DNA of 14,401 bases from positions 1-14,401 of the forward strand of contig NW_021825770.1 of assembly GCF_006345805.1 (NCBI RefSeq), in the 5' to 3' direction. Below, piece by piece: positions 9,970 to 14,401 of the stretch (its first letter is position 1; every line of letters starts with the position of its first letter). This DNA is from Octopus sinensis. Its lineage: Eukaryota. The notes under the pieces are model-generated. The model saw only the letters and a program-made list of their open reading frames with translations, made no database searches and had not been told where the DNA came from. The position numbers and the translations under genes were made by a program.

Positions 9970-10024
<55 letters not shown>
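9958..10024. repeat. (TA)n microsatellite
   Basis: Direct reading. Confidence 0.95.
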
Positions 10025-10027
<3 letters not shown>

Positions 10028-10448
10028 ATACCCTAAGATTTATTAATTAATGATAAAAGGATTTTTTGGCTAATGTTGAAAGTTATATTTACTGCTGAAA
10101 AACCACGCGTGCGTGGTGGATTTTGAAAAGTTATAGCGCATATAAACTCGAGGCAAGGTCCTTATCGCCTCGTGCCTATATGTTAGCCTTGTCTTCCTGC
10201 TGAAGATGGCAACGCCATTTGTAAAGTAAATTAATTTTATTTTATTTACAATGATTACCGAAACTATGCATAGTCCAGGAAAGATAGGGTCACTTTTTTA
10301 TTTCTCTTTCCCATTCAGAATTACAACTAATAGTGGTTTGGAGTTTAACTGCTCTTTCTAGTGAGTCAGATGTCCTATTATGGTCATCTCTTATGTGTTT
10401 AAATGTATATATATATATAATTTAAGAAACACGATATATGTTTTTATG

Positions 10449-10620
10449 TGTTACTATTAGTTTCATGCGATGAAAACATACCAGAGAGTATTTATTGACA
10501 TGTCTGGTGTCTCAGCGCAATCGTCAGCCACTGCCCACGCAGCATTATCTACTTATGCCATGTGGGCAGTGCCTGAGATTGTGTCTGGCAACTTTTCATC
10601 GCATGAAACTAATAGTAACA
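10449..10620. mobile_element. MITE-like palindromic element with perfect 28-bp terminal inverted repeats
   Basis: 10449-10476 TGTTACTATTAGTTTCATGCGATGAAAA is the exact reverse complement of 10593-10620. An inner perfect 10-bp IR CACTGCCCAC/GTGGGCAGTG lies at 10529-10538 and 10562-10571. Confidence 0.85.
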
Positions 10621-10705
10621 TCTAAAAATATTTACTGTATTTATCAAATACTATTTATTTCTCTCCATATAGAGTACATTTTTGCCGATCTTACGGAACA
10701 GTACA

Positions 10706-10706
<1 letters not shown>

Positions 10707-10744
<38 letters not shown>
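10707..10744. repeat. (TA)n microsatellite
   Basis: Direct reading. Confidence 0.9.
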
Positions 10745-10745
<1 letters not shown>

Positions 10746-11405
10746 TAAGGTCAGTCAGCGCCAGCAAAGCTAGAAATAAGGAGTCACAACCCGTAGCCAC
10801 AGATAAGCACTTGTTTAATGACTGACAAGTGAGACAAGCTCCCTACAGCAAGCAAAAAAGACAAAGCCAGATTATCGATGATTTCGGATTTGATTAATCC
10901 TCATCAGTGATTCTCAGCCGGTTGCCAGGGTTGAAGTTAACTCACCTTGTCAGTTTATAGAGAACACCGTAGCGATCAGAAGCTGATACCATAAATGGTA
11001 AAAGTGGAAATTATCAATTATTAAGGAGGCTTATTCGCAATTTACAACCAAAAGGCATAAGTGTTAGACGTCGCTACAGTGACAAGGGTGCTATTTAGCA
11101 CCAACATTGCTAAAGATGAGAGTCAGAACAACTCTTGGCCACGGGGGAGCACTTATCTATTAACTGACAAGGGACACAAGCTCTCTACAGCAAGCGAGAC
11201 AAGGAGAGACAGTAAGCGGGAGCCTCGGCAACCGAGTGAGAGACATCGATGAGGATTAATGAAATCAGAAATCAAAGATGATCTGGCTCTCTCACTTCTA
11301 TAGGAAGCTTGTCTCTCTGGTCAGTCATTAGATAATTGCTCCCCGTGGTTTAGAGTTGTTCTGACCCTTTATTTCCAGGAATGCTGGTGCTAACTGGCAC
11401 CCTTA
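10746..11405. mobile_element. Old foldback/MITE-like element with ~180-bp diverged inverted arms and an internal arm duplicate
   Basis: 10746-10926 aligns by eye with the reverse complement of 11227-11405 (e.g. AGCCAGATTATCGATGATTTCGGATTTGATTAATCCTCATC vs AGCCAGATCATCTTTGATTTCTGATTTCATTAATCCTCATC). 11122-11200 is a further copy, inverted relative to 11288-11365. Confidence 0.7.
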
Positions 11406-11412
11406 TTCACCT

Positions 11413-11442
11413 TAGTTCCGAGCACCTTGGGCAACTTCTACT
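11413..11442 (+). mobile_element. SINE family A stub (founder of the tandem array)
   Basis: GCACCTTGGGCAA----CTTCTACT matches GCACCTTGGGCAAGTGTCTTCTACT (5250-5274) with a 4-nt deletion, and runs directly into the first array unit. Confidence 0.8.
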
Positions 11443-14401
11443 ATAGATTCGGCCCGAGCAAAATCTTGTGAGTGGATTTCGTAATAGATTCGGCCCGAAC
11501 AAAGCCTTGTGAGTGGATTTCGTAATAGATTCGGCCCGAACAAAGCCTTGTGAGTGGATTTCGTAATAGATTCGGCCCGAACAAAGCCTTGTGAGTGGAT
11601 TTCGTATAGATTCGGCCCGAACAAGCCTTGTGAGTGGATTTCGTAATAGATTCGGCCCGAACAAGCCTTGTGAGTGGATTTCGTAATAGATTCGGCCCCC
11701 GTGAGTCGGCCCGAGCAAGCCTTGTGAGTGGATTTCGTAATAGATTCGGCCCGAGCAAAGCCTTGTGAGTGGATTTCGTAATAGATTCCGGCCCGAGCAA
11801 AGCCTTGTGAGTGGATTTCGTAATAGATTCCCCCCGGCCGTAGCAAAGCCTTGTGAGTGGATTTCGTAATAGATTCGGCGTGACAAAGCCTTGTGAAGTG
11901 GATTTCGTAATAGATTTCGCCCGAGCAAAGCCTTGTGAGTGGATTTCGTATAATTCGGCCCGAGCAAAGCCTTGTGAGTGGATTTCGTAATAGATTCCGC
12001 GCCGCCGATCAAAGCTTTGTGAGTGGATTTCGTAATAGATTCGGCCCGAGCAAAGCCTGTGAGTGGATTTCGTAATAGATTCGGCCCGAGCAAAGCCTTG
12101 ATGGGGATTTCGTAATAGATTCGGCCCGAGCAAAGCTTTGTGAGTGGATTTCGTAAGATTCGGCCCGAGCAAAGCCTTTGTGAGTGGATTTCGTAATAGA
12201 TCCGGCCCGAGCAAAGCCTTGTGAGTGGATTTCGTAATAGATTCGGCCCGAGCAAAGCCTTGTGAGTGATTTCGTAATAGATTCGGCCCGAAAAGCCTTG
12301 TGAGTGGATTTCGGTAATAGATTCGACCCGAGCAAAGCCTTGTGAGTGGATTCGTAATAGATTCGGCCCGAGCAAAGCCTTGTGAGTGGATTTCGTAATA
12401 GATTCGGCCCGAGCAAAGCCTTGTGAGTGGATTTCGTAATAGATTCGGCCCGAGCAAAGCCTTGTGATGGATTTCGTATAGATTCGGGCCCGAGCAAAGC
12501 CTTGTGAGTGGATTTCGTAATAGATTCGGCCCGAGCAAAGCCTTGTGGTGGATTTCGTAATAGATTTCGGCCCGAGCAAAGCCTTGTGAGTGGATTTCGT
12601 TAATAGATTCGGCCCAGCAAAGCCTTGTGAGTGGATTTCGTAATAGATTCGGCCGAGCAAAGCTTTGGTGAGGGGATTTTTCGTAATAGATTCCGCCCGA
12701 GCAAAGCGTTGTGAGTGGATTTCGTAATAGATTTCGGCCCGAGCAAAGCTTGTGAGTGGATTTCGTAATAGATTCGGCCCGAGCAAAGCTTTGTGGATTG
12801 GATTATCGTAATGATTCGGCCCGAACAAAGCCTTGTGAGTGGATTTCGTATAGATTCGCCCGAGCAAGCCTTGTGAGTGGATTTCGTAATAGATTCGGCC
12901 CGAGCAAAGCCTTGTGAGTGGATTTCGTAATAGATTCGGCCCGAGCAAAGCCTTGTGAGTGGATTTCGTAATAGATTCGGCCCGAGCAAAGCCTTGTGAG
13001 TGGATTTTCGTAATAGATTCGTCGGCCCGAGCAAAGCCTTTGTGAGTGGATTTCGTAATAGATTCGGCCCGAGCAAAGCCTTGTAGTGAATTTCGTAATA
13101 GATTCGGCCCGAGCGCCTGTGAGTGGATTTCGTAATAGATTCGGCCCGAGCAAAGCCTTGTGAGTGGATTTTCGTAATAGAATTCGGCCCGAGCAAAGCC
13201 TTGTGAGTGATTTCGTAATAGATTCGGCCGAGCAAAAGCCTTGTGATGGTTTTCGTAATAGATTCGGCCCGAGCCAAAGCCTTGTGAGTGGATTTCGTAA
13301 TAGATTCGGCCCGAGCAAAGCCTGTGAGTGGATTTCGTAATAGATTCGGCCCCGAGCAAGCCTTGTGAGTGGATTTCGTATAGATTCGGCCGAGCAAGCC
13401 CTTGTGAGTGGATTTCGTAATAGATTCGGCCCGAGCAAGCCTGTGAGTGGATTTCGTAATAGATTCGGCCCCGCAAAGCCTTGTGAGTGGATTTCGTAAT
13501 AGATTCGGCCCGAGCAAAGCCTTGTGAGTGGATTCGTAATAGATTCGGCCCGAGCAAAGCCTGGTTAGTGGATTTCGTAATAGATTCGGCCCGAACAAAG
13601 CCTTGTGAGTGGATTTCGTAATAGATTCGGCCCGAGCAAAGCCTTGTGAGTGGATTTTCGTAATAGATTCGGCCCGAACAAAGCCTTTTGTGAGTGGATT
13701 TTCGTAATAGATTCGGCCCGAGCACAGCTTTGTGAGTGGATTTCGTCCGTAATAGATTCGGCCCGAGCAAGCCTTGTGGTGAGTGGATTTCGTAATAGAT
13801 TCGGCCCGAGCAAAGCCTTGTGAGTGGATTTCGTATAGATTCGGGTCGGGCGTGTCGGCCCGAGCAAAGCCTTGTGAGTGGATTTCGTAATAGATTCGGC
13901 CCGAGCAAAGCCTTGTGAGTGGATTTCGTAATAGATTCGGCCCGAGCAAAGCTTTGTGAGTGGATTTCGTAATAGATTCGGCCCGAGCAAAGCCTTGTGA
14001 GTGGATTTCGTAATAGATTCGGCCCGAGCAAAGCTTTGTGAGTGGATTTCGTAATAGATTCGGCCCGAGCAAAGCCTTGTGAGTGGATTTCGTAATAGAT
14101 TCGGCCCGAGCAAAGCCTTGTGAGTGGATTTCGTAATAGATTCGGCCCGAACAAAGCCTTGTGATGAATTCGTAATAGATTCGCCCAGCAATCTTTGTGA
14201 GTGGATTTCGTAATAGATTCGGCCCGAGCAAAGCCTGTGAGTGGATTTCGTAATAGATTCGCCCAGCAAAGCCTTGTGAATTGGATTGGGGGCCTTGGAG
14301 TGGATTTCGTAATAGATTCGGCCCGAGCAAAGCCTTGTGAGTGGATTTCGTAATAGATTCGGCCCGAGCAAAGCCTTGTGAGTGGATTTCGTAATAGATT
14401 C
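11443..14401 (+). repeat. SINE-derived 41-bp tandem repeat (minisatellite/satellite), ~72 units, open at the window end
   Basis: Consensus ATAGATTCGGCCCGAGCAAAGCCTTGTGAGTGGATTTCGTA, head-to-tail with no spacers. Matches 5275-5315 at 36/41. Confidence 0.97.

What the first reader, a model, noticed from the sequence alone, without database searches (positions are those of the whole stretch)
11413..14401. Satellite born from a SINE, with the founder stub still attached
Seen: the 41-bp unit matches SINE family A positions 5275-5315 at 36/41, with a 21-nt identical core CAAAGCCTTGTGAGTGGATTT. The array starts exactly in register after a SINE stub (GCACCTTGGGCAACTTCTACT|ATAG). The consensus carries five diagnostic differences from the SINE copy, shared by nearly all units. 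The old copy at 3301-3393 also has the TTCGTA variant. Inference: one diverged SINE copy underwent tandem amplification of an internal CORE-region segment to at least 3 kb, capturing a satellite-birth event.
Basis: partly seen in the sequence, partly recalled or inferred. Interest (0 to 1): 0.75.

Follow-up and report, generated by a model that had tools for sequence, protein, structure and literature searches.

The report
SINE-derived 41-bp tandem repeat array
A 3-kb run of about 73 near-identical 41-base units was copied from the middle of a common short mobile element (a SINE) of an octopus-like genome; this kind of repeat is already known in reptiles, and one window cannot show whether it arose at this spot.

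Summary
Bases 11443-14401 are a head-to-tail array of 73 units of 41 bp that runs off the window end. Its consensus matches an internal segment of the dispersed SINE (5275-5315) at 36/41, with a 21-nt exact core. A 21-nt SINE fragment (11422-11442) continues collinearly into unit 1. No unit shows the SINE base at any of the five differing positions.

The direction SINE to array is therefore well supported. This is a SINE-derived minisatellite or satellite of the kind described in squamates (sSats).

The reading "a birth event captured, with the founder stub attached" is only partly supported:
- Stub-bearing terminal units are the normal anatomy of sSat loci, which can number thousands per genome.
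- One "diagnostic" base (11C) already occurs in a SINE copy of another octopod, Argonauta hians.
- The far end of the array and the rest of the genome are out of reach.

Unit variation is mostly indels (141 indel bases against 44 substitutions), concentrated in short homopolymer runs. True homogeneity is probably higher than it looks, and the array length is uncertain.

No function is indicated. The 915-aa minus-strand ORF is an artefact of a stop-free unit. I rate it a new member of a known kind, of modest interest.

The parts
11422..11442 (+). SINE stub: 21 nt collinear with SINE 5250-5274, lacking GTGT, directly followed by unit 1
11443..14401 (+). Tandem array of 73 units of 41 bp (72 complete). 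It runs off the window end, so the distal flank is not visible
11443..11483 (+). Unit 1. It carries all five array-specific bases plus two private changes (AAAGCC to AAAATC), so it is no more SINE-like than the other units
11484..11685 (+). Units 2-6, an edge block sharing variant 16A (GAACAAAG). The same variant recurs singly in units 34, 53, 55 and 66
5205..5481 (+). Best-preserved dispersed SINE copy: tRNA-like head with a B-box-like GGTTCAGTTCC, body, TA/TG microsatellite, 3' tail. 5275-5315 is the segment homologous to the unit
9214..9604 (+). Second full SINE copy; its 41-nt segment (9302-9342) matches the unit at 32/41
7712..8122 (+). Older SINE copy; segment 7791-7831 matches the unit at 28/41
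3290..3543 (+). 5'-truncated old SINE copy; segment 3325-3365 matches the unit at 31/41 and shares TTTCGTA
10744..11416 (.). Context only: a foldback or TIR element abutting the stub, with termini ACTAAGGT...ACCTTAGT. The inner hairpin 11080-11416 folds at -77 kcal/mol (z = -9.7)

Best explanation
This is a SINE-derived minisatellite or satellite. A 5'-truncated copy of the tRNA-derived SINE that litters this octopod-like genome sits at 11422.

Inferred origin: a 41-bp piece of its body, downstream of the Pol III B box, was duplicated head to tail. The junction GTA|ATAG shows no microhomology. Ordinary tandem-repeat dynamics (unequal sister-chromatid or homologue exchange, replication slippage) then expanded and homogenised it to at least 72 copies.

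Shown: the array, its homology to the SINE, the collinear stub, and the fixation of five array-specific bases in every unit.

Inferred: the mechanism of the first duplication and of the expansion, that it happened at this locus, and that the array has no function. It is best read as neutral or selfish DNA. The units lack the SINE's internal promoter boxes, so any transcription would be read-through.

Much of the unit-to-unit difference is 1-nt indels in short homopolymer runs. These are probably long-read noise, so the array is likely younger or more homogeneous than 88% identity suggests.
For: - Period-41 array: 73 units with 1.5% substitutions against about 4.8% indel bases, 12 perfect units, 52 units with indels.
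- Unit against SINE 5275-5315 is 36/41. That is within the range of SINE copies compared with each other, 27-38/41.
- Stub plus unit 1 are collinear with the SINE, E about 1e-13.
- The 21-nt core has a chance expectation of 0.
- The SINE is dispersed, with six copies or fragments in the window. It is also present in another octopod, Argonauta hians. The SINE is therefore the older, widespread entity and the array is the derived one.
- Edge units 2-6 carry a distinct variant (16A), as expected for the poorly homogenised edges of an array.
- The same anatomy, a tandem sub-SINE unit with a longer terminal unit extending into the SINE, is documented for squamate sSats (PMC10702118).
Against: - Only one end of one locus is visible.
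- The stub is short (21 nt) and stops at a foldback element rather than at a SINE terminus.
- No SINE 3' remainder (GACGGAAACTG) is seen, because the array runs off the window.
- In-situ origin, copy number and array length cannot be verified.
- The indel-rich sequence could reflect a low-quality or partly mis-assembled region.
Confidence: 0.8

Rival explanations
1. This is one locus of an established, dispersed SINE-derived satellite family. The 41-bp repeat arose elsewhere or earlier and exists at many loci. The stub is the family's usual extended terminal unit, not a relic of a birth at this site. This rival shares the SINE origin with the best explanation and differs only on where and when.
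For: In squamates, sSat loci with a SINE-like terminal unit occur in tens to thousands per genome (PMC10702118). All five array-specific bases are already fixed in unit 1. The 11C state pre-exists in an octopod SINE copy. The stub does not reach a SINE end.
Against: No second locus could be found, but no search here could see the host genome. The metagenome, prokaryote-genome and viral collections gave only chance hits, and there were no protein-level hits. The absence is therefore uninformative.
Confidence: 0.35
2. This is a retrotransposed SINE variant with an internal VNTR (SVA-like). A master SINE already carried a few internal 41-bp repeats, inserted here 5'-truncated, and the repeats then expanded.
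For: 5' truncation at the stub is typical of LINE-mediated insertion. SINEs with short internal duplications are known (PMC10702118).
Against: None of the six SINE copies or fragments in the window, nor the Argonauta copy, has even a dimer of the unit. The 3' end, which should carry the SINE tail and a target-site duplication, cannot be seen.
Confidence: 0.1
3. This is an assembly artefact: the array, its length or its junction with the flank is a product of noisy long reads or a collapsed or chimeric contig end.
For: Indel bases outnumber substitutions 141 to 44 and cluster in homopolymer runs. There are messy 10-13-nt insertions and deletions (units 7, 59, 69, 70). The window ends inside the array.
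Against: Shared substitution variants (16A in 9 units, 23T in 8) and a clean, collinear stub-to-unit-1 junction are not what random error produces. Errors would not create a 41-bp periodicity.
Confidence: 0.05
4. This is a repetitive protein-coding gene on the minus strand (ORF 11407-14154, 915 aa).
For: the ORF listing reports a 915-aa ORF and several overlapping ones.
Against: The reverse complement of the unit has no stop in any of the three frames, and 41 is not a multiple of 3, so any such array is open by construction. About 14% of random 41-mers would behave this way (my calculation). Indels shift the frame repeatedly. The periodic peptide has no homologue among 5.8 billion proteins.
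Confidence: 0.01

Closest known systems
SINE-derived satellites (sSat1/2/3) of squamate reptiles (Vassetzky, Kosushkin & Ryskov 2023, PMC10702118)
   Same: Both are tandem head-to-tail repeats of a sub-segment of a tRNA-derived SINE. Both have a terminal unit that extends further into SINE sequence. In both, units are far more alike than dispersed SINE copies are, and subvariants occur in blocks. The proposed origin is the same: an initial duplication followed by unequal recombination and homogenisation.
   Different: The host here is an octopod mollusc, not a reptile. The unit is shorter (41 nt against 67 to about 215 nt) and lies wholly downstream of the B box, whereas the snake sSat3 unit includes box B. 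The stub does not reach the SINE terminus. The number of loci and the chromosomal position are unknown here.
Tandem-like SINE arrays in bivalves (PMC11481361)
   Same: Both are tandem structures built from SINEs with conserved central domains in a mollusc genome.
   Different: The bivalve arrays repeat whole or nearly whole SINEs, with or without target-site duplications, in 2-15 copies. Here a 41-bp internal fragment is repeated more than 70 times.
Octopus tRNA-derived CORE-type SINEs (OR1/OR2; Ohshima & Okada 1994, as cited in PMC4824008 and PMC4758252)
   Same: The parent element has a tRNA-like head with a B-box-like motif. It also has the ACCTTGGGCAAGT motif that I recall as the start of the CORE domain. 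It is found in octopods (Argonauta hit).
   Different: No reference sequence of OR1 or OR2 was available, so identity with either family is untested. The two cited papers disagree on whether OR1 or OR2 is the CORE-SINE.
Minisatellites or VNTRs inside retroelements (for example the SVA VNTR region)
   Same: The unit length (10-100 bp) and the kb-scale array embedded in or attached to a retroposon fragment are similar.
   Different: There is no evidence that this array is mobilised together with the element.

Membership tests
SINE-derived satellite (sSat sensu PMC10702118) | Head-to-tail tandem repeats, at least 4 units | tested here: met
   73 units of 41 bp
SINE-derived satellite (sSat sensu PMC10702118) | The unit is homologous to part of a SINE that is dispersed in the same genome | tested here: met
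   36/41 to 5275-5315, and 28-32/41 to three other copies. Six SINE copies or fragments lie in the window
SINE-derived satellite (sSat sensu PMC10702118) | A terminal unit extends into the adjoining SINE sequence, typically up to the SINE terminus | tested here: inconclusive
   The 5' end extends 21 nt into the SINE but stops at the equivalent of SINE position 5250, not at the SINE 5' end. The 3' end lies outside the window
SINE-derived satellite (sSat sensu PMC10702118) | Multiple loci, satellite-like abundance, subtelomeric bias | not testable with these tools
   The host genome is not in any searchable DNA collection
CORE-SINE superfamily (for the parent SINE) | tRNA-derived head with A and B boxes | tested here: inconclusive
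   B-box-like GGTTCAGTTCC seen at 5229-5239. ARAGORN and Rfam find no tRNA
CORE-SINE superfamily (for the parent SINE) | Conserved CORE domain of about 60-65 bp | tested here: inconclusive
No curated CORE model was available
CORE-SINE superfamily (for the parent SINE) | LINE-derived 3' tail | not testable with these tools
   A shared 3' module exists (5415-5481, 9555-9602, 8065-8122, 3033-3099), but no partner LINE is available
Classical satellite DNA | Very long arrays, high genomic abundance, heterochromatic location | not testable with these tools
   Only about 3 kb of the array (2,959 bp) is seen, and it is cut by the window end
Minisatellite / VNTR | Unit of 10-100 bp in an array of about 0.5-30 kb | tested here: met
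   41-bp unit, array of about 3 kb (2,959 bp) or more. Length polymorphism is not testable

The most novel reading that the evidence does not exclude
The 41-bp unit is not a one-off. It is a major genome-wide satellite of this octopod (for example subtelomeric or centromere-associated), born from the conserved body of the SINE family. That would be the first cephalopod satellite with a traceable transposon origin, and this locus would preserve the transitional SINE-to-array junction.
Probability: 0.12. Interest if true: 0.55.

Novelty: new member of a known kind. Interest (0 to 1): 0.3.

Why it matters
This locus gives a clean junction-level example linking interspersed and tandem repeats outside squamates. 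It sits in a lineage where SINEs make up more than 10% of the genome (11.6% in O. vulgaris, PMC13282606). I found no description of cephalopod satellites in the searchable literature.

There are also practical consequences. Repeat maskers will label the array as dozens of SINE fragments. ORF callers will report a spurious 915-aa "protein". The array probably breaks or degrades long-read assemblies.

If the family proves abundant, it could serve as a cytogenetic marker. It could also test whether satellite genesis from SINEs is a general process rather than a squamate peculiarity.

Tried and rejected
- Other loci through protein space: the minus strand of the unit is stop-free in all frames, so I searched the 123-aa periodic peptide against 5.8 billion proteins. 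There were no hits.
- DNA scans: the 21-nt core and a 25-nt SINE head motif gave 0 hits in metagenome contigs. Prokaryote genomes gave one 21-22-nt match in Adlercreutzia. Viral contigs gave one 16-nt match. Neither extends, so both are chance.
- Literature: a search for the core sequence string gave 0 papers. Searches on octopus or cephalopod with satellite or SINE terms found no cephalopod SINE-satellite report.
- Rfam and ARAGORN on the window returned only low-complexity miRNA-like noise and no tRNA.
- Extending the stub upstream: local alignment of the SINE head to 11331-11421 and to 10601-10743 did not beat shuffles. The apparent TTAGTTCC similarity belongs to the foldback's terminal inverted repeat.
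- SINE 3' remainder: GACGGAAACTG occurs only in the dispersed copies (3366, 5316, 9343), not in the array.
- Higher-order repeat: TRF reports only period 41, and variants 16A and 23T show no regular alternation.
- Coding reading of the 915-aa ORF: rejected.
- A gapped global alignment with cheap gaps gave meaningless alignments. I replaced it with ungapped counts.

Full report
**What is there**

TRF reports a 41-bp period from 11443 to the last base of the window (11443-14287: 68.9 copies, 88% matches, 8% indels; 14292-14401: 2.7 copies, 98%). A wrap-around alignment to the consensus ATAGATTCGGCCCGAGCAAAGCCTTGTGAGTGGATTTCGTA resolves 73 units, 72 of them complete. It counts 2845 matches, 44 mismatches, 70 inserted and 71 deleted bases. 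Twelve units are perfect, 9 differ only by substitutions, and 52 carry indels.

Indels concentrate in short homopolymer runs: AAA at positions 18-20, TT at 6-7 and 24-25, TTT at 35-37, and the A|A unit junction. A few units carry messy 10-13-nt insertions or deletions (units 7, 59, 69, 70). A 3:1 excess of indel bases over substitutions is unusual for natural satellite divergence. It is typical of unpolished long reads, although in-vivo slippage cannot be excluded. The units are thus probably more alike than the 88% suggests, and the exact length is uncertain.

Two substitution variants are shared and therefore real. Variant 16A occurs in units 2-6 next to the proximal edge and in units 34, 53, 55 and 66. 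Variant 23T occurs in eight units. Neither shows higher-order periodicity.

**Relation to the SINE**

The window holds six copies or fragments of one SINE family, all on the + strand:
- 5205-5481
- 9214-9604
- 7712-8122
- 3290-3543
- a head fragment at 3711-3804
- a 3' part at 2809-3099

The element has a tRNA-like head with a B-box-like GGTTCAGTTCC, a body, a TA/TG microsatellite and a shared 3' module.

The array consensus matches 5275-5315 at 36/41 without gaps, with a 21-nt exact core. It matches the other copies at 32, 31 and 28/41. The SINE copies match each other at 27-38/41. The array consensus is therefore no more diverged from the family than an ordinary copy is.

Immediately upstream, 11422-11442 (GCACCTTGGGCAA/CTTCTACT) equals SINE 5250-5274 minus GTGT. 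Stub plus unit 1 form one collinear alignment, 83% over 66 columns, E about 1e-13. Where the SINE continues GACGGAAACTG, the array restarts with ATAG. The junction GTA|ATAG has no microhomology, which I read directly from the sequence.

None of the 73 units carries the SINE base at any of the five differing positions. The only correction is that the SINE match starts at 11422, not 11413.

**Direction and origin**

The flank continues the SINE beyond the unit boundary, and the SINE is dispersed. A translated SINE peptide hits one annotated protein of Argonauta hians. Its locus holds a SINE copy 89% identical over 112 nt. The array is therefore the derived structure.

That Argonauta copy reads CTCGGCCCGACC, so it shares the array's 11C state. 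At least one "diagnostic" difference may thus be an existing SINE variant rather than a founder-private mutation. The hit also supports an octopod source for the window. The species remains unknown, and "octopod" is an inference from this single hit plus my memory of octopus SINE sequences.

**Surroundings**

The stub is 5 nt from the right terminus of a foldback or TIR element at 10744-11416, with termini ACTAAGGT...ACCTTAGT. Its inner hairpin (11080-11416) folds at -77 kcal/mol, z = -9.7.

No SINE head homology above chance lies between the foldback and the stub, or upstream of the foldback. The SINE fragment is therefore 5'-truncated, either at insertion or by a later event. The SINE 3' remainder is not seen because the array runs off the window.

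**How it most likely works**

The mechanism is inferred rather than shown. A 41-bp segment of a resident or ancestral SINE copy was duplicated once. The tandem pair then expanded and was homogenised by unequal exchange and replication slippage. The distinct 16A block at the edge fits weaker homogenisation at array ends.

The unit lies downstream of the B box and so lacks the SINE's internal Pol III promoter. Nothing indicates a function.

The 915-aa minus-strand ORF exists only because the reverse complement of the unit has no stop codon in any frame. Its periodic peptide has no homologue.

**Comparison with the known**

This is the anatomy of the SINE-derived satellites (sSats) described in 56 squamate genomes (PMC10702118). 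Those are tandem sub-SINE units of 67 to about 215 nt, with a longer terminal unit reaching into the SINE, unit similarity far above that of dispersed SINEs, and blocks of subvariants. They range from a few loci to thousands per genome. Bivalves show tandem arrays of whole SINEs (PMC11481361).

In sSat families a stub-bearing terminal unit is the rule at many loci. The stub here therefore cannot show that this locus is the birthplace. I put in-situ origin at roughly even odds against membership in a dispersed family.

I found no report of a cephalopod SINE-derived satellite. The recent O. vulgaris repeat annotation does not mention satellites.

The "CORE-SINE" label for the parent is plausible. 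Octopus OR1 or OR2 is cited as a CORE-SINE. That gave a 20/22 match at ACCTTGGGCAAGT, reached by 1 of 1000 shuffles, and it lies upstream of the unit.

**What could not be done**

No searchable DNA collection contains the host genome. Locus number, copy number, the distal flank, orthologous sites and polymorphism remain untested.

**Verdict**

The SINE origin is well supported, and the "captured birth event" is unproven. This is a new member, in a new host lineage and with a shorter unit, of a known kind of repeat. Interest is modest.

Noticed in passing
window 10744-11416: A foldback or TIR element directly abuts the SINE stub. It has an outer left arm (10744-10930), an inner left arm (11084-11212) and a right arm (11227-11416), with termini ACTAAGGT/ACCTTAGT. 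The inner hairpin is very stable (z = -9.7). Whether it truncated the SINE or promoted the first duplication is unknown.
   Followed up: partly
window 10411-10658: A MITE-like element with about 75-nt inverted ends (80% complementary). The core TIR is GTTACTATTAGTTTCATGCGATGAAAA / TTTTCATCGCATGAAACTAATAGTAAC.
   Followed up: no
window 4000-4561: A large palindrome: 4000-4191 is inverted against 4356-4561 (83%), and 4136-4326 is self-complementary. It is built around (TTA)n/(AAT)n tracts, and part of it also matches 2042-2191.
   Followed up: no
window 4716-4911 and 8176-8385: Another interspersed repeat family (83% over 210 nt), each copy lying upstream of a SINE copy. All SINE copies and the stub share the + orientation. 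This may reflect an old segmental duplication or an orientation bias inside a gene.
   Followed up: no
window 11407-14154 (minus strand): A 915-aa ORF and several overlapping ORFs span the array. They arise only because the reverse complement of the unit lacks stop codons in all three frames. This is a likely source of spurious gene calls.
   Followed up: yes
window 1-5900 and 9368-10744: Very dense TA, TAT, AAT, AC and AG microsatellites, several of them inside SINE copies between body and tail. They produce many sub-threshold Rfam miRNA-like matches (mir-297, mir-3149 and others) that are low-complexity artefacts.
   Followed up: partly
L002 10040-10151 (Argonauta hians BAAFZT010000006.1): A SINE copy annotated as part of a 99-aa 'hypothetical protein', so SINE-derived ORFs are being deposited as proteins. 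It is the only SINE copy in 20 kb there, against six in the first 11 kb of the window.
   Followed up: partly
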